Shown: positions 13,434 to 28,630 of the stretch, one piece after another
Position numbering within the stretch: position 1 is the first letter of the stretch
Layout of the letters: the number at the start of each line of letters is the position of its first letter
Virus record (IMG/VR): IMGVR_UViG_3300042465_005589
Coordinates: 1 to 64,000 of that record
Reading direction: 5' to 3' (one strand)
DNA length: 64,000 bases
Notes under the pieces: model-generated
Told to the model about the DNA's origin: nothing
The model's input: the letters and a program-made list of their open reading frames with translations, nothing else
The model's database searches: none
Translations under genes and position numbers: made by a program

Positions 13434-14654
13434 ATGAAAGAAAAAATAAATGTTTTAGTTCTCGCGTCAGATAAAACAGGCGTAGGGAAATTCAGGTCTT
13501 TAGACCCACATATTAAGTTACAAAATCTATATCCTGACGATTTCCACGTTGATATTGATTATGAACCAAGAATAAATGATATAAAGTATTGGGATAAATA
13601 CCAAATAATCCATGTGCATCGAAATATTGGTAGTCACTATGACCAAACACCATCAATTGTTAAATATTTAAAATCAATTGGTAAAGTGGTTGTTATTGAT
13701 ATTGATGATTATTGGTTACCAACTATTGACCATCCAATACATAGTATTATTGTTCAAAATAAAATTCACGAGAAAATTGTCGCAAACTTAAAAGAAGCTG
13801 ATTGGGTTACAACCACAACTGACATATTCGCCAATGAAATTCGTAAAATCAATAAAAATGTTTTGGTATTACCAAACGCTATTGACCCTAATGAACAACA
13901 ATTTAATCAACCAACACCACCGTCAGATAAAATCAGAATTGGTTGGTTAGGAGGGTCTTCACATTTACACGATTTAAATTTATTAGGTGATTTCGTTCAA
14001 AAGAATCAAGACATTAATGATAAATTACAATATGTAATTTGTGGGTTCGACACAAGAGGTTCTGTAACTGAAATTAATCCACAAACAGGTGAACAAAAGA
14101 AAAGAGATATTCTTCCACACGAAACTGTATGGGTTAATTATGAGGGTATCTTTACAAATAATTACAAAACATTAGATGAAAATTACATTAAATTCTTAAA
14201 GGAATTTAAAGAGAATGAATATATTTCAGATAAAGAATTACCATACGTTAGAGTTTGGACAAAACCGGTTAATTCTTACGCTATGAATTATTCAAAATTT
14301 GATATATCTTTGGCACCGATTAAAAATCACATCTTTAATAGAATGAAATCTCAATTAAAAGTAATTGAGGCAGGATTCTATAAGAAAGCATTAATTGCGT
14401 CTGAAATTGGACCATATACTATAGATTTAAAACATTGTTTAAAAAATGGGGTATTCACCGACGAAGGAAATGCGATTTTAATCCCTGAAAGTAGGAACCA
14501 TAGTGATTGGTCTAAATCAATTAAAAAATTAGTTCAGAATCCTGAAATGATAACTGAGTTAGGAGAGAGATTATATAATACCGTAAAAGACAAATATGAC
14601 CTTAATAAAGTAACGGTTACAAGAGCGGAGTTTTACAAAAGTTTAATCAAATAA
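13434..14654 (+). CDS. glycosyltransferase, GT-B fold (GT4-like)
   Basis: DIDDYW, IGWLGGSSH, DISLAP...FN..KS.LKVIEAG motifs. Confidence 0.8.
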   Translation: MKEKINVLVLASDKTGVGKFRSLDPHIKLQNLYPDDFHVDIDYEPRINDIKYWDKYQIIHVHRNIGSHYDQTPSIVKYLKSIGKVVVIDIDDYWLPTIDHPIHSIIVQNKIHEKIVANLKEADWVTTTTDIFANEIRKINKNVLVLPNAIDPNEQQFNQPTPPSDKIRIGWLGGSSHLHDLNLLGDFVQKNQDINDKLQYVICGFDTRGSVTEINPQTGEQKKRDILPHETVWVNYEGIFTNNYKTLDENYIKFLKEFKENEYISDKELPYVRVWTKPVNSYAMNYSKFDISLAPIKNHIFNRMKSQLKVIEAGFYKKALIASEIGPYTIDLKHCLKNGVFTDEGNAILIPESRNHSDWSKSIKKLVQNPEMITELGERLYNTVKDKYDLNKVTVTRAEFYKSLIK

Positions 14655-14664
14655 AAAACAAAAA

Positions 14665-15375
14665 ATGATAAAAATACCTTTAACTAAAATATTATTTTTA
14701 GATATAGAAACTGTTGGAATTGAAAAAGATTATGACACTTGTTTAGAAAAGAGACCTGAACTCGCTAAACAATTTGACAAATATTACGATTGGTTTTTAA
14801 AACGATTTCCTGAAGATAAGGAAATTGAAGTTAACCAAAAAAATACAGTGTTTGCAACAAGAACAGCTTTAGTTCCTGAATTTGCAAAAATTGTTTGTAT
14901 GAGTGTTGCGTTTGTAATGGATAATGGAGATATAAAAAAAACAACCTTTTCCGGAGACAACGAAAAAGAGGTATTAAAAGAATGTCAAAAATTATTAGAC
15001 CGTTGTGGTAAATTAGATTTTTTTCTATGTGGACATAATTTAAAAAACTTTGACATTCCAATGACAGCTAAAAGAATGATTATTAATGGATTATTACCCC
15101 CATCAATTCTACCTTCTTACGATACAAAGCCGTGGGAAATCAAAGCTATTGATACTAGAGAAATTTGGCAATATGGTGCTTATACAGCGATTGGGTCATT
15201 AGACTTGATGTGTACTTCAATGGAAGTTCCATCACCAAAAGAGGGTGAAGTTACCGGAGATAAAGTACACGACGCATATTGGAACAAAGATATGTTAGAA
15301 GAAATATCTGCATATTGTGAACGTGACGTATTAGTCTTAATTGACATAATAAAAAAATTAAAAGAATTAGAATAA
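14665..15375 (+). CDS. DEDD 3'-5' exonuclease (PolB-exonuclease-like)
   Basis: FLDIET, GHNLKNFDIP, YCERDV. Confidence 0.85.
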   Translation: MIKIPLTKILFLDIETVGIEKDYDTCLEKRPELAKQFDKYYDWFLKRFPEDKEIEVNQKNTVFATRTALVPEFAKIVCMSVAFVMDNGDIKKTTFSGDNEKEVLKECQKLLDRCGKLDFFLCGHNLKNFDIPMTAKRMIINGLLPPSILPSYDTKPWEIKAIDTREIWQYGAYTAIGSLDLMCTSMEVPSPKEGEVTGDKVHDAYWNKDMLEEISAYCERDVLVLIDIIKKLKELE

Positions 15376-16055
15376 TGTTTAACGAAGATTTAGATTTTTT
15401 AAAAAACAAAGCGGAAGAATTAAAAAAATTAGCGAATATTGATTTAGATGATTTAAGTTATGATGATATAATGAGTGAATTTGGTTTGGATTTAAAACAA
15501 CTTGAAGAAGATATGTTAAATTCAAAAACAAGATTACCATTAGGATTTGTAAAAATTCATCCCGACGCAATAACCCCGAAATATAATTATGATAGTGATT
15601 CAGGTTTTGACCTACATTCTGTTGAAGATGTTACCATAGAAGCTTTCGGTCGAGCGTTAGTTCCTAGCGGACTATCCTTTGATATTAAAGATGGATATGA
15701 GATTCAAGTTAGGACTAAAAGTGGTTTAGCCATTAATCAGGGTCTTATGGTTTTAAACTCACCTGGAACTGTGGATTGTTTTTCAGAAGATATGAAAATA
15801 CTAACAATTAAGGGTGAAAAAACGATAAATGAATTAAATCTTAATGATGTTATCTTTTCATTTAATGAAAAGACATTAGAAATTGAAAAAGATATTATTA
15901 CCAACATTTTTAACACGGAAGAACAGGAAATAATTGTTTTTGAAACTGACAATGGAATATTAGAGGTTACACCTAATAGTGAAGTTTATACTAAAAGAGG
16001 GTTATTGTTGGCTAAAGATGTGAAAGAAAATGATGAGATTATTGTTTTTTATTAA
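15375..16055 (+). CDS. dut: dUTPase N-terminal part fused to N-half of a split intein
   Basis: dUTPase motifs SGFDL and RTKSG, half of motif 3 (GTVD), then intein block A CFSEDMKILT; ends at TAA. Confidence 0.9.
   Translation: MFNEDLDFLKNKAEELKKLANIDLDDLSYDDIMSEFGLDLKQLEEDMLNSKTRLPLGFVKIHPDAITPKYNYDSDSGFDLHSVEDVTIEAFGRALVPSGLSFDIKDGYEIQVRTKSGLAINQGLMVLNSPGTVDCFSEDMKILTIKGEKTINELNLNDVIFSFNEKTLEIEKDIITNIFNTEEQEIIVFETDNGILEVTPNSEVYTKRGLLLAKDVKENDEIIVFY
15777..16052 (+). mobile_element. split intein N-fragment (92 aa)
   Basis: Cys1 (codon 135); Hint-like blocks; block B reads EVTPNSEVY; ends AKDVKENDEIIVFY. Confidence 0.85.
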
Positions 16056-16064
16056 CCTGTGTAA

Positions 16065-16071
16065 TATTTAT
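16065..16071 (+). promoter_or_regulatory. putative late promoter motif for the endonuclease and the IntC-dUTPase gene
   Basis: TATTTAT 20 nt upstream of ATG 16092. Confidence 0.5.
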
Positions 16072-16091
16072 CAATAAAGATAAAGGGTATA

Positions 16092-16976
16092 ATGGTAAAA
16101 TGTTTAATTTGTGGGGTAGAAAAAAAATGTTCAATTGTTGAACATTTAAAATTTGTACATCAATTAAAATCTGATGAGTATAAAAAAATGTTCTTTGGTT
16201 CAAAAGTTAAATCAGATGACGAACTATTAAAAATGTCGGATAGAGCCAAAAAAAATTGGAGTAGTCCTGAGTATAAAGAATCTCAAATTAAAATTAGAAA
16301 AATTACACATCAAGACCCAATTTTTAAAGAAAAGATGTCTGAAACTTTAAAGAAAAAACATAAAGAAAATCCGGAGTTATTCACAGGATTTACTCAATGG
16401 TCTAAAACTGAGAAATATAAAGAATGGGTTATATCAAAAGAACGAACAGATAAAATATCTAAAACTAGTAAAAAAAGATGGGAGAATGACGAATATCGAG
16501 AAAAAACCATCAATTCTATTAAGAAATCATTAAATGATGGAAGGTGTGATAAATCGTTAGAGTTTAGAGAAAAAATGTCAATAATTATTTCAAAATTATA
16601 TGCAAATGGTACAATATCTAACGAATCAAATAAATATAAAACAGGTAAATATAATTCAAAAACAAATGAGGTATTTTTATATTCCTCATCATATGAATTG
16701 GAATCTATGGTATTATTTGATGATTCCAACAATATAAAAAGTTGGACTAATAAACATGGAATTAGAATTAAATATTTTTATAATAATTTAAATAGAAATT
16801 ATGTTCCCGATTTTTTAGTTGAGTTTATAAATGGAGTTACTTATATTATTGAAATGAAAGGATGGAACACTGAAGAGGTTGATATTAAAGAATATTACAC
16901 AAAAAAAACATACCCTAACTATAAAATATTCTATAGTGTTAACGAATTAAAACAATTTATAAATGAAAACAACTAA
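16092..16976 (+). CDS. free-standing putative homing endonuclease (C2H2 finger, NUMOD-like basic repeats, TnsA-like PD-(D/E)XK domain)
   Basis: CLIC...H...H; repeated KMS/KIS..K..W....Y helices; YSSSYE...YVPDFLV...IIEMKG. Confidence 0.75.
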   Translation: MVKCLICGVEKKCSIVEHLKFVHQLKSDEYKKMFFGSKVKSDDELLKMSDRAKKNWSSPEYKESQIKIRKITHQDPIFKEKMSETLKKKHKENPELFTGFTQWSKTEKYKEWVISKERTDKISKTSKKRWENDEYREKTINSIKKSLNDGRCDKSLEFREKMSIIISKLYANGTISNESNKYKTGKYNSKTNEVFLYSSSYELESMVLFDDSNNIKSWTNKHGIRIKYFYNNLNRNYVPDFLVEFINGVTYIIEMKGWNTEEVDIKEYYTKKTYPNYKIFYSVNELKQFINENN

Positions 16977-17070
16977 AATACTTAAAATTTCAAAAACAAG
17001 AAAACAAACTTATGATATTACCGTTGAAAATAATCATAATTTTTTCTGTAACAATCATTTAATTCATAAT
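16963..17070 (+). mobile_element. split intein C-fragment (36 aa)
   Basis: TYDITVENNHNFF (block F), LIHN (block G), followed by Cys+1. Confidence 0.9.
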
Positions 17071-17268
17071 TGTGGTTATACCGGAGAAGTTAAAGGAATT
17101 ATATTTAACACCAATAATCATCCTGTAACAATAACTAAAGGAATGAAATTTGGTCAAGCGGTGTTGTGTCCCGTTGTAAATGGGGGTTGGGTTCATTTGG
17201 ACCAAAGAGACAAAGTTACAGATAAAGAAAGAGGTGATAATGGGTTTGGCTCAACAGGATTAATATGA
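16963..17268 (+). CDS. dut: C-half of split intein fused to dUTPase C-terminal part
   Basis: after HN: CGYTGE (rest of motif 3), KFGQ (motif 4), RGDNGFGSTG (motif 5). Confidence 0.9.
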   Translation: MKTTKILKISKTRKQTYDITVENNHNFFCNNHLIHNCGYTGEVKGIIFNTNNHPVTITKGMKFGQAVLCPVVNGGWVHLDQRDKVTDKERGDNGFGSTGLI

Positions 17269-18773
17269 TAACAGTAATATACTCAACACATAAAGATGAA
17301 CAATATAATAACAAATTTAAACAACATTTGTTACAAACCGTTGGTTTAAAAGACGTTCAAATTTTAGAATACAAAAACAATAATGAATTTAGTTTGGCTG
17401 AGATTTACAATAAAGGTATTTCTCAATCAATTTTTGATATTGTAATTTGTTGTCATAACGATATCAAATTAGAAAATGGTTGGGGAAAAAAATTATTAAA
17501 AGATTTTTCAAATAACCCTGATTATGGGATTATTGGAAAAGCCGGTTCTTGTTATTTTCCTGAATCAGGGGTGTACTGGGAACGTATGCAACAAACAATG
17601 GTGGGACAAGTTTATCACCATCCCGATGGTCAAAATAAATGGTTAAGTAAATATTCTTTAAAATTACCATATTTAATTCCAGTAGTAACTATTGATGGGT
17701 TATTTATATCATTTGATAAAACAAAAATTAATCATCAATTTGATGAAACAATTGGAAGATTCCATTTTTACGACCATTTATTCTGTATTCCTAATTATAT
17801 AGATGGTATTAAAATTGGTGTAACATCTTCTTTTGAAATTACACATCAGTCCGTTGGGAGACCGAATCAAGAATTTTGGGAAAGTAAAGATAAATTTATT
17901 GAAAAGTGGGGAAGTAATTTGCCATTAGATTTAAAACCTGAAAAAATTTACATTCCTGAAATAAAAGAAAAACCAATTAAGAATATTGGTAGAGTTGCGG
18001 TTATAATCCCAACCAAAGGAAATGTTGAAATGTTAAAAGAATGTGTTGATTCATTTTACAATTATTGTAATTCTGAGTTATTTGATATTTTTATTGCGGA
18101 CACCGGTTCTACGGATGATGAAAAAGAAATATTAAAAAACAATATAAAAAATTATAACAACATAAAACTAATTGAGTACGATTACTATAATTTTTCAAAA
18201 ATTAATAATGATGTTGTAAAAAATCACGTAACAAATAAACACGAATTTTTATTATTCTGTAATAATGATATTAAATTATTAAATAATGTTATTTATGGAA
18301 TGTTAAATATTTTTAAAACAACACCCAAAGTTGGTACCGTTGGGTGTCGACTTCATTTTGAAGATAATACTATTCAACACAACGGTGTTATTTTAGCTAT
18401 AAATTCAAATAATATTTTTAATATTGGTCATGAAAATTTTAGTTGTTACTATAATTATATAATAAATAAAACAGAGGTTATTGGAAATACTGCAGCACTG
18501 ATGATGATTAAAACAAATATATTTAAAGATAATGGTATGTTTAATGAGAATTATCTTGAGTGTTTTGAAGATGTAGAATTAAATTTTAAATGTGTAATAA
18601 GTGGATATAAAAATTATATGTGTGGTGATTTAGTTGGTTATCATTATGAAAGTAAAACTAGAAATAACGATAACAATAAATTAACAAAACAAAACGAAGA
18701 TTACTTAAAAAGATTATTACCATTTTTAAATAAAAATTATCTTAAACTATTAAAACTAATTAAAAAAAATTAA
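17265..18773 (+). CDS. two-domain GT2-family glycosyltransferase
   Basis: CHNDI and CNNDI motifs, VIIPTK, ADTGSTD, FEDVEL. Confidence 0.85.
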   Translation: MITVIYSTHKDEQYNNKFKQHLLQTVGLKDVQILEYKNNNEFSLAEIYNKGISQSIFDIVICCHNDIKLENGWGKKLLKDFSNNPDYGIIGKAGSCYFPESGVYWERMQQTMVGQVYHHPDGQNKWLSKYSLKLPYLIPVVTIDGLFISFDKTKINHQFDETIGRFHFYDHLFCIPNYIDGIKIGVTSSFEITHQSVGRPNQEFWESKDKFIEKWGSNLPLDLKPEKIYIPEIKEKPIKNIGRVAVIIPTKGNVEMLKECVDSFYNYCNSELFDIFIADTGSTDDEKEILKNNIKNYNNIKLIEYDYYNFSKINNDVVKNHVTNKHEFLLFCNNDIKLLNNVIYGMLNIFKTTPKVGTVGCRLHFEDNTIQHNGVILAINSNNIFNIGHENFSCYYNYIINKTEVIGNTAALMMIKTNIFKDNGMFNENYLECFEDVELNFKCVISGYKNYMCGDLVGYHYESKTRNNDNNKLTKQNEDYLKRLLPFLNKNYLKLLKLIKKN

Positions 18774-19333
18774 TGATAACGTTTTTAGCAACAGCATATA
18801 AAGAGACAACAGATTCTTATCAATTTATAAGTTCTTTAATATTACAACAAAACCCAAATTGGGAGTGTATAATTCATTGTGATGAAAAAAATGAATATCT
18901 TGAAAAGTGTGTTAATTTTTTTAATTCGGATAAAATAAAAGTGATATATAATGAAACACCAACGTCTTATTGGGGACATTTTAACCGAAAAAATACATTA
19001 GAATTAGTGAGTACTGAGTTTGTAATTCAAACGTCTATTCAGGACTATTATACACCTAACACCGTAAGTGAATTATTGTCAAATTTGACTGATTGTGATA
19101 TGGTTATGTATAATTGTATCCATAACCATTTTAATTATAATGTGTTAGACTCTACACCTATTAGATGTAGAATTGATTGGGGTTCATTTGTCATAAGAAC
19201 AGACATAGCCAAAAAAGTGGGGATTAATCATCCTGAATCACCATTTTGCGATGGTATTTTTGTTGAAGAATGTTTAAAACATCCAAATATAAGAACGAAA
19301 AAAATAAATAAAATATTAACTGTACATAATTAA
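18773..19333 (+). CDS. GT2-like glycosyltransferase (short)
   Basis: LILQQNPNWECIIHCD N-terminal GT-A pattern. Confidence 0.6.
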   Translation: MITFLATAYKETTDSYQFISSLILQQNPNWECIIHCDEKNEYLEKCVNFFNSDKIKVIYNETPTSYWGHFNRKNTLELVSTEFVIQTSIQDYYTPNTVSELLSNLTDCDMVMYNCIHNHFNYNVLDSTPIRCRIDWGSFVIRTDIAKKVGINHPESPFCDGIFVEECLKHPNIRTKKINKILTVHN

Positions 19334-20323
19334 ATGAAGATATCGATTATTGGAACAGGGTGGGTTGGATGTCATTTGTCTAATGTGTTAAAAAACGAAC
19401 ACGATGTCACGCTATATGAAAAAAATGACAAAATATTTAATGGCACTTCTTACTATAATCAAAATAGATTACATTATGGTTATCATTATGCGAGAAACTA
19501 CGAAACCAGAAATTTGTGTAAAACAACTTTTTATAGGTTTATAAACGACTATGGGTTTTGCGTGACCGATATTGATAAAAACTTTTATTGCGTACCTAAA
19601 AAATTATCTTTAATTGATTTAAACACATATTTAAAAATTTTTGATGAGTATCCGTCTGAATTAACTTCCCATAATTTTAGTAATACTGAAGGATGTATTT
19701 TAACAAATGAAAAACATATTAATTTTAAAAAAGTTAAAAATTATTTTCAAAAAGAATTAGATGGGTTAATAAAATATGAAACAATAGATAATGTAAAATT
19801 AGAACAACTATCTAAAAACTCGGATTTAGTTATTGATGCGACAAATAATTTTATGGGATTAATAAATACTGATTTTTTTTATGAGTTAACCATAACATTA
19901 ATTTATGATAAAATTAAATCAACTAATTTCGATTCTGTGACATTTGTTGATGGTGAACTATTTTCTATCTACCCTTATAAAGATAATAAGTTTACATTAA
20001 CCGATGTTAAATTAACACCATTAAAAAAGTTTTCATCAGTTAATGAAATCGATGAATATAAAAAATTAATAAATGATGAATTTATTTTAAATAAAATTAA
20101 AGAATTTGAAAATCGAGTTATGACATTTATGCCGGAATTCAACGAATACTTTAAATATGACTCTTATTTTTTATCAATAAAAAGTAAAGTAAATGATGAG
20201 TCGGATAGTCGATATCCAGTAATAAAACAAACAAACAATATAATTTCATGTTTTACCGGAAAAATACAAGGAATTTATATTATTGAGGATTATATTTTAA
20301 ACATAATTAATAATGACAAATGA
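19334..20323 (+). CDS. FAD-dependent oxidoreductase
   Basis: IIGTGWVG Rossmann motif, GTSYYNQNRLHYGYHY. Confidence 0.8.
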   Translation: MKISIIGTGWVGCHLSNVLKNEHDVTLYEKNDKIFNGTSYYNQNRLHYGYHYARNYETRNLCKTTFYRFINDYGFCVTDIDKNFYCVPKKLSLIDLNTYLKIFDEYPSELTSHNFSNTEGCILTNEKHINFKKVKNYFQKELDGLIKYETIDNVKLEQLSKNSDLVIDATNNFMGLINTDFFYELTITLIYDKIKSTNFDSVTFVDGELFSIYPYKDNKFTLTDVKLTPLKKFSSVNEIDEYKKLINDEFILNKIKEFENRVMTFMPEFNEYFKYDSYFLSIKSKVNDESDSRYPVIKQTNNIISCFTGKIQGIYIIEDYILNIINNDK

Positions 20324-21359
20324 AGAATTATCGTTTCTATTTAACAAATACTTGAATAGAAATTTTACAAACCATGAACTAATTGTTCATGGTAAAAAAA
20401 CAGTAAGTTTTTTAGAAAATGAAATATTAAATTGTAACGAATATTTAAAATTACCCACAAGAAATACTAACATAAATGATTTGAAAGTTGCCATTTTATT
20501 AAGTGGTCATATCAGAAAAAACTCAATATTAAAAGGGATAAATCAATTTTGTAATAATGAAAATTTTCATGTTTTTATACATACATGGGATAATATAGGA
20601 TTGAAAGGTAGTGAAACCTTATTAAACGATTTATCCGCCGAAACTTCCGTGATTTCTGAAATAAACAAATTCACTAATATGAAAAACCATGAAATAGATA
20701 ATAATAAATATTGGATTGAATCTCAAGAAATTAAAGATAACTATTTTAATTTTTCATCTCCAGAAATTTTTATTAAATCTCAATTATATTCTATTAATAA
20801 ATCATATAAATTAATGGAACAATATTCAAAAGAAAATAATATTGAATATGATGTGGTTTTAAAAATAAGATTTGATTGTGATATGACAGAATTTAATTTA
20901 ACAGATAAAATAATCTCAGACATAAAAACTCATGATATTATTTTTACCCCTAATATTGATAATCAACATACTCACATGGACTATGGTACATCTTGTTGGG
21001 CATGTGACAGTTTATATTATAAACATAATAGAAAAATGGTTCATATTTTTGACCACACAAATGTTATATGTGATTTATTTGCGTATGGGAGTAAAGATTC
21101 AATGAAACAATATTGTGATTTATATAATAATTATGATGAACTAAACAAATCTTTTTTTGATAAAAATCTAAAGCAATTTAAAAGAGTCCCTAAAAATATT
21201 GTTCATGAAGGTGGTAATTATAACTTAAAAGGTCATGAAGGTCACGTAGATTCATTATATTATTACTATTGCTCATATCCGGAAAGATTACTACAATTTC
21301 AATTAAAAGATTATATGTTAGTTCAATCAAAAGAAATTAAATTAAACTTAGTTCGATGA
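20313..21359 (+). CDS. putative glycan-modifying protein
   Basis: VAILLSGHIR...VFIHTW...YDVVLKIRFD...DLFAYG...YPE pattern seen in polysaccharide loci. Confidence 0.5.
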   Translation: MTNEELSFLFNKYLNRNFTNHELIVHGKKTVSFLENEILNCNEYLKLPTRNTNINDLKVAILLSGHIRKNSILKGINQFCNNENFHVFIHTWDNIGLKGSETLLNDLSAETSVISEINKFTNMKNHEIDNNKYWIESQEIKDNYFNFSSPEIFIKSQLYSINKSYKLMEQYSKENNIEYDVVLKIRFDCDMTEFNLTDKIISDIKTHDIIFTPNIDNQHTHMDYGTSCWACDSLYYKHNRKMVHIFDHTNVICDLFAYGSKDSMKQYCDLYNNYDELNKSFFDKNLKQFKRVPKNIVHEGGNYNLKGHEGHVDSLYYYYCSYPERLLQFQLKDYMLVQSKEIKLNLVR

Positions 21360-22117
21360 AAATATTAATAGGAAACACCGGTTTAGTAGGGCAAACTTTA
21401 AAAGAAAGTATAAATTTTGAATTTGAATATAATTCAAAATCAATTCATAATTATTTACCACCTGATGGATGTGACTTGTATTTATCTTGTTTACCTTCAA
21501 CAAAATGGTTAATTAATAAAGATACGAAGTCAGATATTGAAACTGTGGTAGACATTATTAAATTAATAGGCGATGTTAAATATAAAAATGTATATGTAAT
21601 ATCTACGATTGATGTATATGGGAATTCACCTGTAGGTGTTGACGAAGATTTTGAACCAATATTCAAAGATTTTTCTTATGGGTCGAATAGATATCTTTTT
21701 GAAAAAATGGTTGTAAAACACTTAAACTATGAGAATGTAAAGATTTTTAGATTACCAGCTTTATTTAGTAAAAATATTAAAAAAAACATATTATACGATT
21801 TATTGAATAATAATAACATTCATATGATTAATAAAAATTCATCATTCCAATGGTATAATTTAAATGATTTGGTGAGTGATATAAATTTGTATGGTAAAAA
21901 TTACTCTAACGAAATAGTTTTTAATTTATTTACGGAACCATTGGAAAGTGAAGAAATCATTAATTTATTCCCGTCTCATAAAGAAAAAGTTATACATTCC
22001 GAAATTAAAATACAGTACGATTATACGACCAAATATTCGTCAACCGGATACATAAAACCTAAAGAGGTAATATTAAATGAAATTAAAAAATTGGTAAACG
22101 AAATTGCTCTTAAATAA
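21356..22117 (+). CDS. NAD(P)-dependent epimerase/dehydratase-like protein
   Basis: LIGNTGLVG, ISTIDVY, YGSNR, RLPALF. Confidence 0.75.
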   Translation: MKILIGNTGLVGQTLKESINFEFEYNSKSIHNYLPPDGCDLYLSCLPSTKWLINKDTKSDIETVVDIIKLIGDVKYKNVYVISTIDVYGNSPVGVDEDFEPIFKDFSYGSNRYLFEKMVVKHLNYENVKIFRLPALFSKNIKKNILYDLLNNNNIHMINKNSSFQWYNLNDLVSDINLYGKNYSNEIVFNLFTEPLESEEIINLFPSHKEKVIHSEIKIQYDYTTKYSSTGYIKPKEVILNEIKKLVNEIALK

Positions 22118-22119
22118 TA

Positions 22120-23220
22120 TTATAAAGTCATTCTATTTGAATGATTAGATTTTATTTTTTCCATTGAGATTTCAATTGGTAAACACTTGTCACTAAAATA
22201 ATTTATTTGGTTAAACAATGTTTCATGGTTTTTAATCTTGTTAACATAATTATTTGTATCTAATAGTTCTTCAGTTAATATTTCATCAACAATTTTTGAG
22301 TATTCTATATTGGAAATACCTTCCTTATTTGGTAAAACTAAACAACTTTCTTTTAAATCAATATCTTTAGTGAATATTTTTTGGTATAATAACAATTCTT
22401 CTTCGGATAGTATTGGTACTATATTATAAGCAAAACACTGATAAAAAGATATTCTAGTTGGGGTATCCCCTCTTAACACAAACAAATATTTTGTTTTCAT
22501 TAATTCCTCTTCTATATTTAACATACTACCAATATAAACTTCTGTTTTTAATTGTAGTATAAAACTTCTAATTCTATTAAGTAATGGTCTAGACTCTGAA
22601 TGTAAAGAACCAATAAATGTTAGGTCATATTTTTTTTCACAACTTATAATTTTTTTTATAGAAGGAAGTGAAAATAAACTATTACTATTCAACACATATG
22701 GAATCGTAATTATTCTGTCGTATGTACCCATTTTAAAAGTTGTGGTAGTATTAAAAAAAGATACCTCATCCTCATAGCTTAAAATAAAAATATCCTTGTC
22801 GATTGATTCAAAAGAAGTTTCAAATAAAACATAACTATATAAAATAAAATGCGGAATTTTTAAATTTGATTCTACGTTATTTTTAATAAAATTATCCCAA
22901 TAAAATTTAATAAAATTTTCTTTATACCCAACACCAAACGTAGGTGGTTGAACTTTTGGGATTAAATCAGAATACTTGTCATAACTTTTTAAATGAATAA
23001 AAAGTTTGTTATGATTACTAGGGGTTATAGACCCATAAATCAATCTAATAAAGTCTATCGGTATGAAAGCAATATCAGATTCATTGATATCATCAACCAC
23101 TTCATATTTTAATTTTAGTTTATCCAAAAATATATTGTATAAATCCATTTCAGGTGGTAAGGACTCAAAAAATGACATAATTTTTTCTAATTCTTTGATA
23201 TTATAAATAAAAATCTTCAT
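22120..23220 (-). CDS. exostosin (GT47)-like glycosyltransferase
   Basis: start MKIFIYN (23220); ADIAFIP-like, IPY, TFIGS, LFVLRGDTPTRISFYQ...VPI. Confidence 0.7.
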   Translation of the reverse strand: MKIFIYNIKELEKIMSFFESLPPEMDLYNIFLDKLKLKYEVVDDINESDIAFIPIDFIRLIYGSITPSNHNKLFIHLKSYDKYSDLIPKVQPPTFGVGYKENFIKFYWDNFIKNNVESNLKIPHFILYSYVLFETSFESIDKDIFILSYEDEVSFFNTTTTFKMGTYDRIITIPYVLNSNSLFSLPSIKKIISCEKKYDLTFIGSLHSESRPLLNRIRSFILQLKTEVYIGSMLNIEEELMKTKYLFVLRGDTPTRISFYQCFAYNIVPILSEEELLLYQKIFTKDIDLKESCLVLPNKEGISNIEYSKIVDEILTEELLDTNNYVNKIKNHETLFNQINYFSDKCLPIEISMEKIKSNHSNRMTL

Positions 23221-23241
23221 ACTTATTAAATATAAGTCTAT

Positions 23242-24252
23242 ATGTCTAATAATAAATGTTTTCACATATTAAATATTAATCCCGAATTTAATTCAGACTT
23301 ATTACCAATACACATAAATGATAATGAAATAATTAATAATCATTTTATTAAATTTGACGATTATAAATTTTTACGGTCACAATATTCTTTAGAGATAGTG
23401 TTACATAATATGTTTAGAGAACACAAAAATTTAATAAATAATTATGAAAATTCTGACATCGTATTCATCCCTATTTATTTATTTTGCACCGCATGGTCAA
23501 AGAAATATTTTTATGATGTTAATCAAATAATTAATAAAATAAATTTAATCTTACCGTTAATTAATAACTGTGTTAATGATGGTAAAAAAGTTATTATTAC
23601 TTATTCAGATGTTATGTGGGAGGATAATAGATGTTTTTTAAATTACTTTAATTTCCATGAAAACATTTATGTTATTTGTTATGAAGATGTGATAAGTACA
23701 AACAATCAAATCCCGGTACCATATTGTACTCATATTAAAAAAAACCCAAAAGATTATATTATACCTCAAAACATTAACAAAAAACACTTAATAAGTTATG
23801 CAGGTAGATATAGAAAAGAAATTGATTACTTTAATAATATTCAGGTATTAAATACAAATACAGTAATCGATGATAAATGGATTAGCATTAATAATGTGGA
23901 CACATACAATGAAATTGATGAGCTTTATTTAAATAGTCATTTTTCGTTACAACCACATGGGGATAAACAATCGAGAAAAGGGTTCTATCATAGTTTATTA
24001 CTTGGATGTATACCCGTAATATTTGATGACAATTATGGTATATATGAAAAAGTGTTAAATGGCATTGTTAATATTGAAGATATTTCTGTAATATTAAACA
24101 AACATGAAAACAATTTTGAAGACGTATTGAATAAAGAATTAATAAACATTAATTCAAAGATTGAAAATATTAATAAAATAAAACATTTATTATTGTACGA
24201 TGAGAATGATTTATCAATTGTTGATTTTATTTTAAATAAAATTAAATTTTAA
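23242..24252 (+). CDS. exostosin (GT47)-like glycosyltransferase
   Basis: SDIVFIP, VPY, SHFSLQPHGDKQSRKGFYHSLLLGCIPV. Confidence 0.8.
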   Translation: MSNNKCFHILNINPEFNSDLLPIHINDNEIINNHFIKFDDYKFLRSQYSLEIVLHNMFREHKNLINNYENSDIVFIPIYLFCTAWSKKYFYDVNQIINKINLILPLINNCVNDGKKVIITYSDVMWEDNRCFLNYFNFHENIYVICYEDVISTNNQIPVPYCTHIKKNPKDYIIPQNINKKHLISYAGRYRKEIDYFNNIQVLNTNTVIDDKWISINNVDTYNEIDELYLNSHFSLQPHGDKQSRKGFYHSLLLGCIPVIFDDNYGIYEKVLNGIVNIEDISVILNKHENNFEDVLNKELININSKIENINKIKHLLLYDENDLSIVDFILNKIKF

Positions 24253-24274
24253 AATATACAAATATATTAAAAAT

Positions 24275-25033
24275 ATGAAATTATCATTAAGTAACTTAGC
24301 GTGGGATATCTCCGATAACGACCAAATCTTAACTATATTAAAGACTAAAAATATTCATAATATTGAAGGTGTTCTAACTAAAATTAATGAATGGGATAAA
24401 TTATCTAACGATGTTTTAATAGAGTATAAAAAAAAGTTAGACTCTTACAATATTAAAATGGAGTCAATTCAGTCAATATTTTATGATGTTAAATGTGATG
24501 GAATTAAAGATACGAAAATAGTTTATAAACATATTGACAGACTAATTGAAATATGTAAAATATTAGGGGTTAAGGTTATGGTTTTTGGGTCTCCTACCAT
24601 TAGAAATGGAATCGTTGATGATTCGTTATCTAAAATATTTAAAAGGATTGATAATTCACTTAACAATACAGGTATTGCTCTAACTATTGAACCTAACTCT
24701 AAAGTTTATGGGGGGAATTATTTTTATAATATAGAAGAAATTGTTGATTTTATTAAAAATAATAAATTTATTAATATTAAAACAATGATTGATACCCATA
24801 ACTTAAAATTAGAAGGTTACGACCCAATTATTGAATTAAGTAAGTATTATGACTATATTAATCATATACATATTTCGGAAATAAAATTGACACCAATTAT
24901 AAATCCTGATATACATATAAATTTCTCAAATGAACTTAAAAAATTAGGATATAATCAAATAATCACATATGAGGTTTTAAAATGTGATAATATTGAATCT
25001 GAAATAAAAAAATTTGTTGAGATTTACAACTAA
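24275..25033 (+). CDS. sugar phosphate isomerase/epimerase (xylose isomerase-like TIM barrel)
   Basis: MKLSLSNLAW, VFGSP, IEPN, DTHN, HIHISE, YE. Confidence 0.8.
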   Translation: MKLSLSNLAWDISDNDQILTILKTKNIHNIEGVLTKINEWDKLSNDVLIEYKKKLDSYNIKMESIQSIFYDVKCDGIKDTKIVYKHIDRLIEICKILGVKVMVFGSPTIRNGIVDDSLSKIFKRIDNSLNNTGIALTIEPNSKVYGGNYFYNIEEIVDFIKNNKFINIKTMIDTHNLKLEGYDPIIELSKYYDYINHIHISEIKLTPIINPDIHINFSNELKKLGYNQIITYEVLKCDNIESEIKKFVEIYN

Positions 25034-25050
25034 ACAATTAAAAAAATAAA

Positions 25051-25794
25051 ATGGCTGAACAGCGAAAAAAGAAACCAACAACAACTCCGAACTCGGAAGT
25101 GACCGGTAAACCGGTAAGTAAAAAAGATTTAATTGCTCAAATTATTAAAAGAAAAACTAAAGAAAAGTTTTTAACTTTAAATCAAAAAAAATATTACGAT
25201 ACTTTAATTGACAGTGAAATCACAGTTTGTTCGGGACCAGCGGGTGTCGGTAAAAGTTATATAACAATGAAAGCTGCGATTGACTTACTTTCAGACCCAA
25301 AAACCCCTTACGAAAAAATAATAATTGTTAGACCAGCTGTTGAGGCTGAAGAAAAATTGGGTTCACTACCAGGTAATGTTGAAGAAAAGTTAGACCCATA
25401 TATCTTCCCATCTTATTACCTATTAAATAAAATTATTGGTAAAGAATGTCGAGAAAAACTTAAAGAGATTGAAGTTATTGAAGTGTTTGCGTTAGCGTTT
25501 ATGAGAGGTATGAATATTGACAATTCAATATTAATATTTGAAGAGGGTCAAAATGCGTCCCCGAGTCAAATGAAACTTCTTTTAACAAGAATAGGTTATA
25601 ATAGTAAATTTTTTATATCAGGAGATGTTGAACAGTCTGATAAATATAAAAATAAAACATTAAGTGGGTTATGGGACGCAATTGAAAAATTTAGAGATGA
25701 CGACTATGTTTCCACATTTGAGTTTAAAGATAAAAATGATATCGTTAGAAATCCATTAATAAGTAAAATATTAGAAAAATACGAAGATAAATAG
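25051..25794 (+). CDS. phoH: PhoH-family ATPase
   Basis: GPAGVGKS, RPAVE, LG.LPG, FMRG, EEGQN, LLTRIG, GD..QSD, DIVRNPL. Confidence 0.93.
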   Translation: MAEQRKKKPTTTPNSEVTGKPVSKKDLIAQIIKRKTKEKFLTLNQKKYYDTLIDSEITVCSGPAGVGKSYITMKAAIDLLSDPKTPYEKIIIVRPAVEAEEKLGSLPGNVEEKLDPYIFPSYYLLNKIIGKECREKLKEIEVIEVFALAFMRGMNIDNSILIFEEGQNASPSQMKLLLTRIGYNSKFFISGDVEQSDKYKNKTLSGLWDAIEKFRDDDYVSTFEFKDKNDIVRNPLISKILEKYEDK

Positions 25795-25821
25795 AATTAA
25801 AAACATTAATTTAATAGAGAA

Positions 25822-25860
25822 GATAAGTGACTATATTTTAGTTTACTTATCTTTTTTTTT
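25822..25860 (+). terminator. possible intrinsic terminator
   Basis: gataagt...acttatc stem followed by T9. Confidence 0.55.
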
Positions 25861-25877
25861 ATATAACTTTTATTGAT

Positions 25878-26480
25878 ATGAGAATCGGTATAGAAATTAA
25901 TGGAGTATTACGAAATACTTTGGGGAAAATTGAACAAACTTATCAAAAATTTTTAATTGATAAAACAGATGGTATAGAGAATGAAGACTCTTTTGAATAT
26001 AAGATGACTTATCCGATAAACAGTTTAACGTTAAATGAACATTTCTCATTTCCGGATGAAGATGAATTATTTTCATTTTTATATGAAGAATTTGCTATGG
26101 AAATTTTTGGTCACGCACAGTCTTCAGAATATAACACTTTTACTGATTTAAACGAGGTTTACGTCTCTTTAAGAGATAATAATGATTTACTGATAGTTTC
26201 TGATGAAATAGGTAAATCAAAACCTGCATCACTATTCTTTTTATCCAAATTTGGTTGCCAATTAGAAAAAGTAAAATTTTATAGTAATTCAACAATTAAT
26301 TCAATGTGGGATGAAATTGATATTTTACTTACATCAAATCCCATCTTATTATTGGAATATCCCTCAGATAAAATATTAATAAAATACGACACTGAGTATA
26401 ATGAGAATATTAACACAATCCATTCTATAAAATCAATAAAAGAATTGGAGGATAAATTAAAACAAATTTTAGAATGTTAA
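25878..26480 (+). CDS. HAD-like (5'-nucleotidase-like) protein with degenerate motif I
   Basis: MRIGIEINGVLRN in place of IGIDxDGVL. Confidence 0.5.
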   Translation: MRIGIEINGVLRNTLGKIEQTYQKFLIDKTDGIENEDSFEYKMTYPINSLTLNEHFSFPDEDELFSFLYEEFAMEIFGHAQSSEYNTFTDLNEVYVSLRDNNDLLIVSDEIGKSKPASLFFLSKFGCQLEKVKFYSNSTINSMWDEIDILLTSNPILLLEYPSDKILIKYDTEYNENINTIHSIKSIKELEDKLKQILEC

Positions 26481-26752
26481 AAGTATTAGGAGAAAACTAT
26501 TATGTAGATTTGGATAAAATAGATGACTATGTCCAAATAAAACCAAAAAAAAATATCACATCAGGTGATACTGAAGGTACCGCCATTAGTATAATTAAAT
26601 ATGAAACTATCAAGTTAATGTTAGAAATAATTATGGATGAGCCTGAAGAGATTGACGAACAATTAGGGGCTAAAGGAACTAACAATTTATCTATACCCTT
26701 TAAATTAGCGTTTAATACTCTATTATATAAAAAATTACTAAATAAAATATAA
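26474..26752 (+). CDS. hypothetical protein
   Basis: 92-aa coupled ORF. Confidence 0.65.
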   Translation: MLKVLGENYYVDLDKIDDYVQIKPKKNITSGDTEGTAISIIKYETIKLMLEIIMDEPEEIDEQLGAKGTNNLSIPFKLAFNTLLYKKLLNKI

Positions 26753-26757
26753 TTAAT

Positions 26758-27822
26758 ATGACACAAGAACAAATTACAAAGCTAGAACAGTCAATTCAAA
26801 ACATGAAAGATAAAAAATCGAGAATTTATCTTTTAGTACAAGACACTAAAGGTAATGCAAAAGCCTCTGTTGCTTACATATACGATTTAGGTATGACATT
26901 ACTAAAAATTGGATATAATCCAATTATCTTACACGAAACACCGGATTATACTGGTGTTGGAGAATGGTTAGGTGAAGAATACATGACATCATTACCTCAT
27001 AAAACTATTGAGGGTCAAAATTTGGAAATTGCTCCTGAAGATTTAATTGTTATTCCTGAATTATATGGGTTTGTTATGAGTCAAATTGCAAAGTTACCTT
27101 GTGGTAAAATTGTATTATCTCAAGCTCACGACCATATTTTGGAAACTCTACAACCAGGTCAGACATGGTCGCAATTAGGGTTTTATAAATGTATAACAAC
27201 ATCTGAAACTCAAAAAGAATATATTGAAAATCTTATGAGAGGCATTTCAATTGATGTGTTAAAACCATTTATTTCAGATAAATTTAAACCTAATCCATTA
27301 CCAGCAAAACCAATTATAGCGATTCACGCTAGAGAACAAAGAGAAGCTGTTAATATGATTAAAAGTTTTTACATTAAATTTCCACAATACAGATGGATAA
27401 CTTTTAGAGATATGAGAGGATTAACTATTGACGAATTCGCAACAGCGATGAAAGATTGTTTCTTATCTGTTTGGATTGATGAGACAAGCTCTTACGGTAC
27501 ATTCCCATTAGAATCGATGAAATGTAAAATACCGGTAGTTGGTTTAGCACCAAATTTGGTACCTGAATGGATGAATGAAGATAACGGTATTTGGGTAAAC
27601 AATAAAACTCAAATGGTTGATTATGTTGCCGACTTTTTACAAAATTGGTTAGAAGATAGTATTAATGAAAATTTAGAACAAGAAATAATTAAAACATCTG
27701 AAAATTTAAGTACTAAAGAAGATTTTGAAAAAATAGCGACAAATTTATTTGAAGGATATCTAACAAAAAGATTAGAATCATTTGAAGAACAATTAAATAA
27801 ACTACAAACAATAGAAGAATAA
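26758..27822 (+). CDS. GT-B-like glycosyltransferase
   Basis: IVIPE, SSYGTFPLESMKCKIPVVG donor-binding motif. Confidence 0.6.
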   Translation: MTQEQITKLEQSIQNMKDKKSRIYLLVQDTKGNAKASVAYIYDLGMTLLKIGYNPIILHETPDYTGVGEWLGEEYMTSLPHKTIEGQNLEIAPEDLIVIPELYGFVMSQIAKLPCGKIVLSQAHDHILETLQPGQTWSQLGFYKCITTSETQKEYIENLMRGISIDVLKPFISDKFKPNPLPAKPIIAIHAREQREAVNMIKSFYIKFPQYRWITFRDMRGLTIDEFATAMKDCFLSVWIDETSSYGTFPLESMKCKIPVVGLAPNLVPEWMNEDNGIWVNNKTQMVDYVADFLQNWLEDSINENLEQEIIKTSENLSTKEDFEKIATNLFEGYLTKRLESFEEQLNKLQTIEE

Positions 27823-27823
27823 T

Positions 27824-28630
27824 ATGGAAAATTACTTTGACGTATCAGTTATATTACCGATTAAATCGGCAACCGTACCATTTTTTGAGGATTACTTTAA
27901 AAAATGTATCGAATCATTAAATAATCAAAAATTAAGAATTAATGAATTAGTCATTGTTCATACAAATGAAACACCATTAGTAGAACTTATTAAAGATTAT
28001 GATTTTGGTGATTTAAATGTTGTTAAATTAGAATGGGATAAAGACCCTAATTATGCCGCACAAGTTAATCATGGTGTTAGAAATTCTAAATCTGAATGGA
28101 TTTCATTATTTGAATTTGACGATGAGTACTCAAATATATGGTTTAAAAATGTTAACGTTTATGCAAACGCATATCCTAATATCGACGCATTTTTACCAAT
28201 AGTTGTTGATACAGACCAAAAAGGTAAATTTGCTGGATTTACTAATGAAGCTACTTTCGCGGCAAACTTTACACCTGAAATGGGTATTTTAACACATGAT
28301 ACTTTATTAGATTATCAAAATTTCCAATCATCAGGAATGGTAATTAAAAAATCAAAATTTGTTGATTATGGATTATTTAAACCATCGTTTAAATTAACGT
28401 TTGGATATGAATTATTCTTACGATTAACACATAATTCCATTAACATAATGTCTATACCGAGAATTGGTTATAAACATACAAATTTAAGAGATGGTTCAAT
28501 CTTTTGGAATTACAAAAATGGTAGAGATATTTTAACTCCGGAAGAAGTTAAATTTTGGATTGAATCCGCAAAAAAAGAATATTTTTTCATTAATGACAGA
28601 GCAATAAAATTTGAATCTCAAGAATCTTAA
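27824..28630 (+). CDS. GT2-like glycosyltransferase
   Basis: VSVILPI, CIESLNNQ, N.GV, WISLFEFDD. Confidence 0.7.
   Translation: MENYFDVSVILPIKSATVPFFEDYFKKCIESLNNQKLRINELVIVHTNETPLVELIKDYDFGDLNVVKLEWDKDPNYAAQVNHGVRNSKSEWISLFEFDDEYSNIWFKNVNVYANAYPNIDAFLPIVVDTDQKGKFAGFTNEATFAANFTPEMGILTHDTLLDYQNFQSSGMVIKKSKFVDYGLFKPSFKLTFGYELFLRLTHNSINIMSIPRIGYKHTNLRDGSIFWNYKNGRDILTPEEVKFWIESAKKEYFFINDRAIKFESQES

What the first reader, a model, noticed from the sequence alone, without database searches (positions are those of the whole stretch)
16056..16976. The intervening endonuclease carries its own late-promoter motif and is coupled to the IntC-dUTPase gene
Seen: the 36-nt gap after IntN contains TATTTAT (16065-16071), the motif that precedes virion genes. 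The ORF has a C2H2 finger, about four basic helical repeats and a TnsA-like PD-(D/E)XK domain, and overlaps the IntC start by 14 nt. Inference: a selfish nuclease that cuts intein-less dut alleles, sits in a position it cannot easily be lost from, and may shift the ratio of dUTPase halves late in infection. It is in frame with IntN, compatible with descent from a contiguous endonuclease-bearing intein, although that has a 1-in-3 chance anyway.
Basis: partly seen in the sequence, partly recalled or inferred. Interest (0 to 1): 0.6.

Follow-up and report, generated by a model that had tools for sequence, protein, structure and literature searches.

The report
Mobile nuclease cassette splitting phage dUTPase
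A jumbo T4-like phage carries its dUTPase gene in two halves, joined by a split intein whose gap holds a self-regulated DNA-cutting gene; the whole insert moves between related phages, making it a new variant of the known "fractured gene" arrangement.

Summary
Every sequence observation checks out. The layout is dUTPase-N+IntN (15375-16055), a 36-nt spacer with TATTTAT (16065-71), a 294-aa ORF (16092-16976), and a 14-nt overlap with IntC+dUTPase-C (16963-17268).

The ORF has an invariant C2H2 finger, a duplicated helical module, and a PD-(D/E)xK domain closest to TnsA (Z 10.1).

This is the "fractured gene" arrangement of Dassa et al. 2009. The host gene is new, and so is the nuclease type.

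Comparative data support a mobile homing cassette:
- 74 of 80 syntenic relatives have an uninterrupted dut.
- The cassette is 83-99% identical in DNA where the flanking exteins are 50-81%.
- Nuclease dN/dS is 0.09-0.27.
- Relatives at only 29-40% identity still sit in or beside dut.

TATTTAT is a real element that depends on orientation and position. It lies before 95 of 406 genes and heads the capsid, portal, protease and terminase operons. It sits inside a hairpin, conserved across the family, that pairs with the start region, as in I-TevI and mobE. The "late" timing is inferred; no RNA data exist.

The in-frame relation is chance (16 of 29 loci). Descent from a contiguous nuclease-bearing intein is not supported.

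The parts
15375..15776 (+). dUTPase N-extein, 134 aa, ending ...NSPGTVD inside catalytic motif III
   Evidence: Pfam dUTPase E 1.1e-6 and phrog_135 E 5.7e-25. Aligns end to end with uninterrupted dut alleles of relatives.
15777..16055 (+). IntN, the N-terminal half of the split intein (92 aa plus stop). It starts with Cys1. Block B reads TPNS, without the usual His.
   Evidence: Weak PT-HINT and Intein_splicing Pfam hits. Homologous IntN is found in all split loci, and the missing His is family-wide.
16055..16096 (+). RNA hairpin that pairs ACC (16055-57) with G-GU of the start codon region, and pairs upstream bases with the GGGUAUA region. The inner stem is TTTATC/GATAAA.
   Evidence: MFE -10.2 kcal/mol, z -1.7 for the window alone. 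The same design is found in 20 of 20 family members, with z down to -8.2 and different arm sequences.
16065..16071 (+). TATTTAT, the phage's own promoter-like element (extended form TATTTAT-N-AATAAA), 27 nt before the nuclease ATG and in the 5' half of the hairpin
   Evidence: Present in 20 of 21 distinct spacers of the window's clade (one has TATCTAT), with nuclease at 49-100% identity. It matches the class B consensus, and this class heads the MCP, portal, protease and TerL operons.
16092..16976 (+). Free-standing homing-type endonuclease, 294 aa. Residues 1-33 are a C2H2 finger, 39-178 a duplicated helical module, and about 180-294 a TnsA-like PD-(D/E)xK domain (E202, D240, E254, K256).
   Evidence: dN/dS 0.09-0.27. 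Single copy in the genome.
16963..16976 (+). 14-nt overlap of the nuclease 3' end with the IntC start codon
   Evidence: Overlaps of 14-53 nt in all 24 distinct split loci. The same feature is reported for 15 fractured-gene loci in PMC2677866.
16963..17070 (+). IntC, the C-terminal half of the split intein (36 aa), with block F YDITVENNHNFF and block G ending HN
   Evidence: Pfam Intein_splicing E 4.5e-5. Terminal HN followed by C or S in all 26 distinct sequences.
17071..17268 (+). dUTPase C-extein (65 aa plus stop). It starts with Cys+1 (CGYTGE...) and ends with motif V GFGSTG.
   Evidence: Pfam dUTPase E 1.2e-8. The +1 residue is C or S in every occupied allele and mostly N, Q or S in empty ones.

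Best explanation
The locus is a mobile 'fractured gene' cassette made of IntN, a regulatory spacer, a free-standing endonuclease and IntC. It sits in catalytic motif III of the dUTPase gene of a 318-kb T4-like phage; promoter and leader features suggest a Bacteroidota host.

**Shown**
- The anatomy of the locus.
- Conserved splicing residues (Cys1, terminal HN, Cys/Ser at +1).
- Conserved nuclease catalytic residues.
- Purifying selection on the nuclease.
- Presence or absence of the cassette among close relatives.
- Higher conservation of the cassette than of its flanks, with a sharp boundary at the extein junction.
- A hairpin conserved across the family that covers the start region.
- The match of TATTTAT to the phage's own element upstream of virion genes.

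**Inferred**
- The nuclease cuts intein-less dut alleles near the GTVD|NGY site during co-infection. Repair then copies in the cassette together with the +1 Cys codon.
- The two dUTPase halves are rejoined by protein trans-splicing.
- On the long operon transcript the hairpin blocks translation of the nuclease. Transcripts that start just after TATTTAT, inside the hairpin, lack the 5' arm and are translated. This would limit the nuclease to the phase when phage-specific promoters fire, as shown for I-TevI and for mobE of phage Aeh1.
- IntC is translated from its own A-rich leader, which lies inside the end of the nuclease gene.
For: - **Anatomy and domains:**
- **Known arrangement with the same overlap and hairpin/late-promoter features:** PMC2677866 and PMC2988022.
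- **Occupancy:** 74 of 80 loci syntenic through the upstream exonuclease have an uninterrupted dut and 6 carry the cassette. The closest exteins are empty: L105 at 96/95% and L059 at 89/88% with the exonuclease at 97%.
- **Cassette against flanks:** in L104, IntN is 89%, the nuclease 89% and IntC 100% identical, against dutN 61% and dutC 71%. DNA identity drops from 98% to 69% at the IntC|dutC junction. Cassette dS is about half that of the flanks.
- **Selection:** nuclease dN/dS 0.09-0.27.
- **Tie to dut:** nucleases at 29-40% identity are still inside a split dut intein or directly after an intact dut.
- **+1 residue:** C or S in all occupied alleles.
- **Spacer:** nearly invariant in the 21 distinct loci of the window's clade.
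- **Hairpin:** found in 20 of 20 members, with different arm sequences.
- **Motif statistics and operon heads:**
- **Phage sigma factor:** a sigma-70 family gene is present in the genome.
Against: - There is no biochemical or RNA evidence. No sequencing run holds the stretch, so cleavage, trans-splicing, the transcription start and the timing are all untested.
- The window's own hairpin is weak when taken alone (z -1.7; 15 of 200 shuffles fold as well).
- TATTTAT overlaps the inner stem, so part of its conservation could come from RNA structure. In L018, a T-to-C change in the motif improves pairing.
- The motif also precedes 34 genes at -11, many of them small, so it may not be specific to late genes.
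- It is the reverse complement of the T4 late consensus, not the consensus itself.
- T4 gp55 finds no match in the genome.
- dS values are near saturation, so the factor-of-two difference is approximate.
Confidence: 0.8

Rival explanations
1. The cassette was once mobile but is now a fixed, domesticated resident. The nuclease gene would be kept only because its 3' end supplies the IntC start and leader. The conserved spacer would be only a translational operator, and TATTTAT would be part of a stem rather than a promoter.
For: The overlap with IntC is universal. TATTTAT forms half of the inner stem TTTATC/GATAAA. In L018 the motif is lost through a change that improves pairing. Distant relatives keep the hairpin but not the exact motif.
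Against: The catalytic residues are invariant and dN/dS is 0.09-0.27 over the whole 294 aa, not just the 3' end. The cassette is younger than its flanks and is absent from the nearest relatives. L008, L009 and L037 keep TATTTAT although the pairing partner has changed.
Confidence: 0.12
2. The arrangement is the remnant of a contiguous intein with an embedded endonuclease that broke apart, which is the reader's 'in frame' suggestion.
For: IntN and the nuclease are in frame in the window and in 16 of 29 distinct loci.
Against: The frame varies (12 loci at +2, 1 at +1) and spacer length varies from 5 to 58 nt. Relatives of the nuclease stand free after an intact dut and in unrelated places in Bacillus phages. 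It carries its own start region and hairpin. The 120 listed of 144 IntN-region hits are all 127-241 aa, so no contiguous dut intein appears among them. Known intein-embedded nucleases are of other families (general knowledge).
Confidence: 0.05
3. The nuclease is a weapon for competition between phages (marker exclusion or host or rival DNA degradation), or a repair or resolvase enzyme that merely lies next to dut. It would not be a site-specific homing enzyme.
For: The fold is shared with resolvases and VRR-NUC, and PHROG hits include 'Holliday junction resolvase'. Free-standing relatives occur in other contexts.
Against: The strict link with dut holds across 29-100% identity and two architectures. 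The cassette boundaries coincide with the intein-extein junctions. The large DNA-binding N-terminal part (finger plus duplicated helices) is typical of sequence-specific phage endonucleases (inference).
Confidence: 0.08

Closest known systems
Fractured genes: split intein with an intervening free-standing homing endonuclease (Dassa, London, Stoddard, Schueler-Furman & Pietrokovski 2009, PMC2677866)
   Same: A conserved DNA-metabolism enzyme is broken in two on one strand. IntN ends the first ORF and IntC starts the second. A free-standing nuclease gene lies between them, and its 3' end overlaps the IntC start (6-69 bp there, 14-53 nt here). A hairpin, usually with a late-promoter element, lies before the nuclease. 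Such loci are found mainly in phages from aquatic metagenomes.
   Different: dUTPase is not among their eight host enzymes. Their nucleases are GIY-YIG or Vsr-like (EDxHD). This one is a C2H2 finger plus a duplicated helical module plus a TnsA-like PD-(D/E)xK domain. Their promoter element is TATAAATA, whereas here it is TATTTAT(A). Here the same nuclease family is also found standing free after an intact copy of the same target gene.
Late-promoter-in-hairpin control of I-TevI, I-TevII, I-TevIII, segB (T4) and mobE (Aeh1 nrdA) (reviewed in PMC2988022)
   Same: The nuclease gene lies inside an earlier operon. A hairpin sequesters its ribosome-binding or start region. A phage-specific promoter element sits within the hairpin, so transcripts started there cannot fold it.
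   Different: Those cases were shown by primer extension and reporter assays, while here the control is predicted only. The motif sequence differs. In the window's clade the hairpin covers the AUG itself as well as an SD-like GGG, in a phage whose genes mostly lack SD sequences.
TnsA of Tn7 (PDB 1f1z, 1t0f)
   Same: It is the best structural match to residues 156-285 (Z 10.1, 128 aligned residues). The catalytic constellation is E...D...ExK.
   Different: Sequence identity is 13-15%. There is no TnsA C-terminal domain and no TnsB/TnsC partners. The Pfam TnsA_N score is below the curated cut-off. The context is a phage homing cassette, not a transposon.
PD-(D/E)xK-type homing endonucleases I-Ssp6803I (2ost) and I-Bth0305I (3r3p, EDxHD family)
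   Same: Restriction-endonuclease-fold enzymes that act as homing endonucleases. I-Bth0305I relatives occupy fractured genes.
   Different: Structural similarity is only weak (Z 4.8 and 5.8). There is no EDxHD motif, and the DNA-binding part is different.

Membership tests
Fractured gene (split intein + free-standing endonuclease) | One conserved enzyme gene split into two same-strand ORFs that together cover the whole enzyme | tested here: met
   dutN (134 aa) and dutC (65 aa) align end to end with uninterrupted dut alleles in 74 syntenic loci.
Fractured gene (split intein + free-standing endonuclease) | Intein halves with splicing residues: Cys/Ser1, block B Thr-x-x-His, block F, terminal His-Asn, nucleophile at +1 | tested here: inconclusive
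   Cys1, block F, terminal HN and C/S at +1 are present in all sequences. The block B His is absent in the whole family (TPNS/TENT/TPGT). Splicing activity cannot be tested here.
Fractured gene (split intein + free-standing endonuclease) | Separate endonuclease ORF between the halves, with its own start and stop, overlapping the IntC start | tested here: met
   ORF 16092-16976, with stops in the spacer. Overlap is found in 24 of 24 distinct loci.
Homing endonuclease (functional class) | Occupied and empty alleles co-exist, and the element is inherited horizontally with flanking co-conversion | tested here: met
   6 occupied against 74 empty syntenic loci. Cassette DNA identity is 83-99% against 50-81% in the exteins, with a gradient on the left and a sharp edge on the right.
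Homing endonuclease (functional class) | Site-specific cleavage of the empty allele | not testable with these tools
   Needs purified enzyme and substrate DNA.
PD-(D/E)xK nuclease superfamily, TnsA-like branch | Restriction-endonuclease core fold with E...D...(D/E)xK catalytic residues | tested here: met
   AF2 model with pLDDT 86. TnsA Z 10.1 and VRR-NUC Z 8.3. E202, D240, E254 and K256 invariant.
PD-(D/E)xK nuclease superfamily, TnsA-like branch | Pfam Tn7_TnsA-like_N above the gathering score | tested here: not met
   16.9 bits against a cut-off of 26.5 for the window protein. 17 of 21 members hit at E <= 0.1, with best E 3.7e-5. It is a relative of the fold, not a TnsA orthologue.
EDxHD / Vsr-like homing endonucleases (I-Bth0305I) | EDxHD motif and Vsr-like active site | tested here: not met
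   No such motif appears among the invariant columns. Structural Z is only 5.8.
T4-type late promoter | TATAAATA on the coding strand about 15-40 nt before the gene, with no -35 element | tested here: not met
   The enriched sense motif is TATTTAT(A), the reverse complement. TATAAATA appears in sense before 23 genes and in antisense before 63. The architecture is alike: a single short element with no -35.
C2H2 (Ros/MucR-like) zinc finger | C-x2-C-x10-H-x4-H with a beta-hairpin plus helix | tested here: inconclusive
   Of the four ligands, C7, H18 and H23 are invariant and C4 is nearly so, and the model shows beta-beta-alpha at pLDDT 93. Pfam ROS_MUCR scores 15 bits against a cut-off of 25.4, with 14 of 21 members hitting weakly.
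NUMOD3 DNA-binding repeats | Pfam NUMOD3 match in the helical region | tested here: not met
   No NUMOD3 hit at E <= 0.1 in any of 21 members. A distant Bacillus phage relative is annotated with NUMOD3.

The most novel reading that the evidence does not exclude
This is an undescribed homing-endonuclease family (C2H2 finger + duplicated helical module + TnsA-like PD-(D/E)xK) dedicated to dUTPase genes. It occurs both standing free after an intact dut and inside a split dut intein, within one well-supported clade. The natural series would capture the step by which a free-standing nuclease and an intein join and break a gene. The intein itself is a naturally split, block-B-His-less type that could be a new orthogonal trans-splicing tool.
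Probability: 0.45. Interest if true: 0.6.

Novelty: new variant of a known kind. Interest (0 to 1): 0.45.

Why it matters
Fractured genes are the proposed link between free-standing homing endonucleases, inteins and naturally split inteins, and they gave the fastest split inteins used in protein engineering.

This locus adds three things:
- a new host enzyme, dUTPase, cut in its catalytic motif III;
- a nuclease type not so far reported in this role;
- unusually rich natural comparison material: dozens of empty and occupied alleles in freshwater phage populations, plus relatives of the same nuclease standing free beside the same target gene.

That material makes several questions directly testable. 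One is the order of events in gene fracturing. Another is the co-conversion of the +1 nucleophile codon. A third is the carriage of a promoter and hairpin control module by the mobile element.

It is not a surprise in kind. The arrangement and its control logic were described in 2007-2010.

Tried and rejected
- **RNA evidence.** The look-up of sequencing runs listed no run holding the stretch, so no reads were laid and the transcription start is untested.
- **PHROGs annotation.** I tried to classify motif-bearing genes as structural or not. Only the head maturation protease was named among 20 proteins, so 'late' rests on the MCP, portal, protease and TerL operons alone.
- **T4 gp55 search of the genome.** No match, which is uninformative. 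A Sigma70_r2 search did find one clear and one weak phage sigma candidate.
- **I-TevI-style operator idea** (spacer resembling the homing site). The best case is 11 of 13 matches, reached by 32 of 300 shuffles. Another is 15 of 19 on the opposite strand, but in a part of the spacer that is not conserved. I rejected this as evidence.
- **Sigma-70-type promoter and terminator scan of the operon.** Promoter-like sites were at chance level (71 found, 71.7 expected), and there were no + strand terminators.
- **Search for a contiguous dut intein.** None among the 120 listed of 144 hits. The search sees only proteins of 124-395 aa, so longer fusions are not excluded.
- **Literature.** No paper on a dUTPase intein or on a TnsA-like intein-associated homing endonuclease was found in the held library. 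The three 'dUTPase and intein' papers I opened concern other genes or only list dUTPase among phage enzymes.
- **Direction of the switch between free-standing and split forms.** The tree has no reliable root, so this stays open.
- **Not used.** The large profile search and complex prediction were not needed for any claim.

Full report
**Setting.** The window is the first 64 kb of a single 318,164-bp virus record that CheckV rates as complete. GC content is 31%. The record encodes a T4-type major capsid protein, portal and large terminase, so it is a jumbo T4-like phage. Its nearest relatives are uncultured phages from freshwater metagenomes.

**Observation.**
- ORF 15375-16055 is a dUTPase N-part followed by an intein N-half. 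ORF 16963-17268 is an intein C-half followed by the dUTPase C-part.
- The junctions are ...GTVD|CFSEDM... and ...LIHN|CGYTGE..., so the intein sits in dUTPase motif III.
- The 36-nt spacer holds TATTTAT at 16065-16071. The 294-aa ORF starts at 16092 and overlaps the IntC ATG by 14 nt.

**The nuclease.**
- Twenty-one homologues at 32-100% identity keep C7, H18 and H23 invariant and C4 nearly so. These form a C2H2 finger that the model shows as beta-beta-alpha. E202, D240, E254 and K256 are also invariant.
- The middle of the protein is a tandem duplication of a two-helix module.
- The C-terminal domain matches TnsA best (Foldseek E 7e-5; VIA Z 10.1 over 128 residues). VRR-NUC follows at Z 8.3. 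The known homing enzymes I-Bth0305I (Z 5.8) and I-Ssp6803I (Z 4.8) match only weakly.
- Pfam hits to TnsA_N, DUF1064 and Ros/MucR are consistent across members but fall below the curated cut-offs. NUMOD3 is not detected.
- dN/dS against relatives is 0.09-0.27.
- The gene is single-copy in the genome.

**Mobility.**
- I searched IMG/VR with the upstream exonuclease gene. Of the 80 best syntenic loci (73-100% identity), 74 carry an uninterrupted dut and 6 carry the cassette.
- The window's closest extein relatives are empty. L105 is 96/95% identical in the exteins. L059 is 89/88%, with its exonuclease at 97%.
- Where the cassette occurs in more distant phages, it is more conserved than its host gene. 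In L104, IntN is 89%, the nuclease 89% and IntC 100% identical, against dutN 61% and dutC 71%.
- At the DNA level the cassette is 83-99% identical and the exteins 50-81%. Identity falls from 98% to 69% exactly at the IntC|dutC junction and rises gradually through dutN on the left.
- Synonymous divergence of the cassette is about half that of the flanks, although the values are near saturation.
- Every occupied allele has Cys (or Ser in three distinct alleles: L009, L034, L042) at +1. Empty alleles mostly have Asn, Gln or Ser there, so the +1 codon must travel with the cassette. Three distinct empty alleles (L067, L083, L101) have Cys.
- Together these are the classical signs of a homing element that spreads among co-circulating phages.

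**Tie to dut.**
- Searches with the nuclease found 79 proteins and 38 further loci.
- Nearly every locus with enough flank is in one of two forms. In the first, the nuclease lies between homologous IntN and IntC halves at the same dut site. Members at only 29-40% identity in other genomic contexts also have this form (L011, L034, L036, L041, L042, L044, L047).
- In the second, the nuclease lies directly downstream of an intact dut (L010, L012/13, L038, L040, L046).
- In a maximum-likelihood tree, the free-standing forms sit in a clade with 100/99 support together with the split forms L044 and L047. The architecture therefore changed at least once, but the root, and hence the direction, is open.
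- More distant cousins in Bacillus phages are free-standing 'endonucleases' in unrelated places.
- The 120 listed of 144 hits to the IntN region are all 127-241 aa, so no contiguous dut intein appears among them.

**The motif and the hairpin.**
- Across the genome, sense TATTTAT lies within 60 nt upstream of 107 of 406 ORFs, against 43 antisense. It peaks at -11 (34 genes) and from -17 to -40 (66 genes; consensus TATTTATAaatAAAA). There is no -35-like partner.
- The motif heads the operons of the capsid protein, portal, prohead protease and terminase.
- It is almost disjoint from a second class of 40 genes preceded by TAnnTTTG, the Bacteroidota housekeeping -7 element (3 genes shared).
- The phage encodes at least one sigma-70 family protein. 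A phage-specific promoter class is therefore plausible. 'Late' is a reasonable label but remains unproven.
- The motif is the reverse complement of the T4 late consensus, not the consensus itself.
- The nuclease site matches the extended class B form (TATTTAT-C-AATAAA-G). It is the only such site found inside the + strand gene run 13434-22117 (all same-strand gaps under 40 nt), which has no + strand terminator.
- The spacer sequence ...ATAC-TATTTATCAATAAAGATAAAGGGTAT-ATGGT is nearly invariant in the 21 distinct loci of the window's clade, whose nucleases are 49-100% identical. It is better conserved than the coding DNA.
- The spacer folds into a hairpin whose 3' arm covers the GGG and the AUG. 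The window alone gives -10.2 kcal/mol and z -1.7, while relatives reach z -3 to -5.
- The distant members have quite different sequences but the same design. An anti-SD arm, an AT-rich loop with a TATTTATATATA- or TAATATATATAG-type element, and an SD arm pair through different bases. All 20 sequences tested fold this way, with z down to -8.2.
- This is the control module shown experimentally for I-TevI and reported, with similar promoter-and-hairpin arrangements, for I-TevII, I-TevIII, segB and Aeh1 mobE. In that module a late promoter inside the hairpin yields transcripts that cannot fold it (PMC2988022). Dassa et al. noted the same module in 15 of 16 fractured-gene nuclease leaders.
- L008, L009 and L037 keep TATTTAT while its pairing partner changes, which argues for a sequence-specific role. 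L018 loses the motif through a change that improves pairing, which argues for structure. Both constraints probably act.

**What is not supported.**
- The in-frame relation of IntN and the nuclease holds in 16 of 29 distinct loci, and spacers range from 5 to 58 nt. The nuclease also has free-standing kin and its own control module. Together these favour invasion of a mini-intein (or of its target site) by a free-standing gene, as in Dassa's model, over decay of a contiguous intein.
- 'Cannot easily be lost' sits badly with the predominance of empty alleles, some of them with Cys at +1.
- The suggested late shift in the ratio of dUTPase halves is untested. No RNA run holds the locus.

**Verdict.** The arrangement and its regulation belong to a known kind. 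The host enzyme, the nuclease family and the coexistence of free-standing and intein-embedded forms at one target gene make it a new variant with good experimental prospects.

Noticed in passing
window 1-2800 (- strand ORF 2-2800, open at the contig end): About 2.2 kb of 9-nt periodic repeats (units of 27, 99, 189 and 333 nt). All three listed frames stay open and GC is 42%, against 31% elsewhere. On the - strand it reads as Ser/Gly/Thr-rich triplet repeats, perhaps a fibre or collagen-like virion protein.
   Followed up: partly
whole genome; examples upstream of window genes 35976, 37724, 53984, 58920, 62485: Forty genes are preceded by TAnnTTTG at -60 to -15, the Bacteroidota-type -7 promoter element. 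Most genes lack a Shine-Dalgarno sequence and have A-rich leaders. This points to a Bacteroidota host and to a host-polymerase (early) promoter class separate from the TATTTAT class.
   Followed up: partly
genome-wide, e.g. window 29407, 55425, 56413; many between 105 and 170 kb: Thirty-four genes have TATTTAT exactly 11 nt (range -13 to -9) before the ATG, often right after a G-rich terminator hairpin. A start a few bases after the motif would give leaderless or nearly leaderless mRNAs.
   Followed up: no
window 28630-29379 (+) and G000:C1:209969-210178 (-): Phage-encoded sigma-70 family candidates. One is a strong region-2 match (63 bits) in a 272-aa frame at 210 kb. The other is a weak match (15.5 bits, below cut-off) in the window ORF, which lies just before a TATTTAT site. 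T4 gp55 itself finds nothing.
   Followed up: partly
window 15777-16055 and IntN of all related loci: The intein family lacks the block B histidine. The position reads T-P/E-N/G-S/T in all 18 aligned sequences, while Cys1, block F and the terminal HN are canonical.
   Followed up: partly
L067, L083, L101 (empty dut alleles): Three distinct intein-less alleles carry Cys at the +1 position, where other empty alleles have Asn, Gln, Ser or Phe. This could be a footprint of precise cassette loss, or a pre-adapted site.
   Followed up: no
L005-L007 611-1369; L008 8067-8882: Related phages carry other putative free-standing nucleases near the same region (weak NUMOD3 in both, plus a faint MTES_1575 hit in L005-L007) that the window phage lacks there.
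   Followed up: no
window 13434-28630 (+) and the matching parts of L001-L009: There is a long run of glycosyltransferase and sugar-modifying genes downstream of dut. Its content differs from one relative to the next, so it is a variable cassette region.
   Followed up: no
window 56857-58905 (+): A full-length ClpB/Hsp104-type double AAA+ ATPase (AAA_2 E 2.7e-70, ClpB_D2-small) is encoded between virion genes.
   Followed up: no
window 16078-16090 versus the empty dut site in L060: The conserved GATAAAGGGTATA just before the nuclease ATG resembles the homing-site sequence GAT|AATGGTTATA (11 of 13). This recalls the I-TevI operator, but the match is not significant (32 of 300 shuffles).
   Followed up: yes
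L017 2501: One close relative has TTG in place of the nuclease ATG, with an otherwise identical leader.
   Followed up: no
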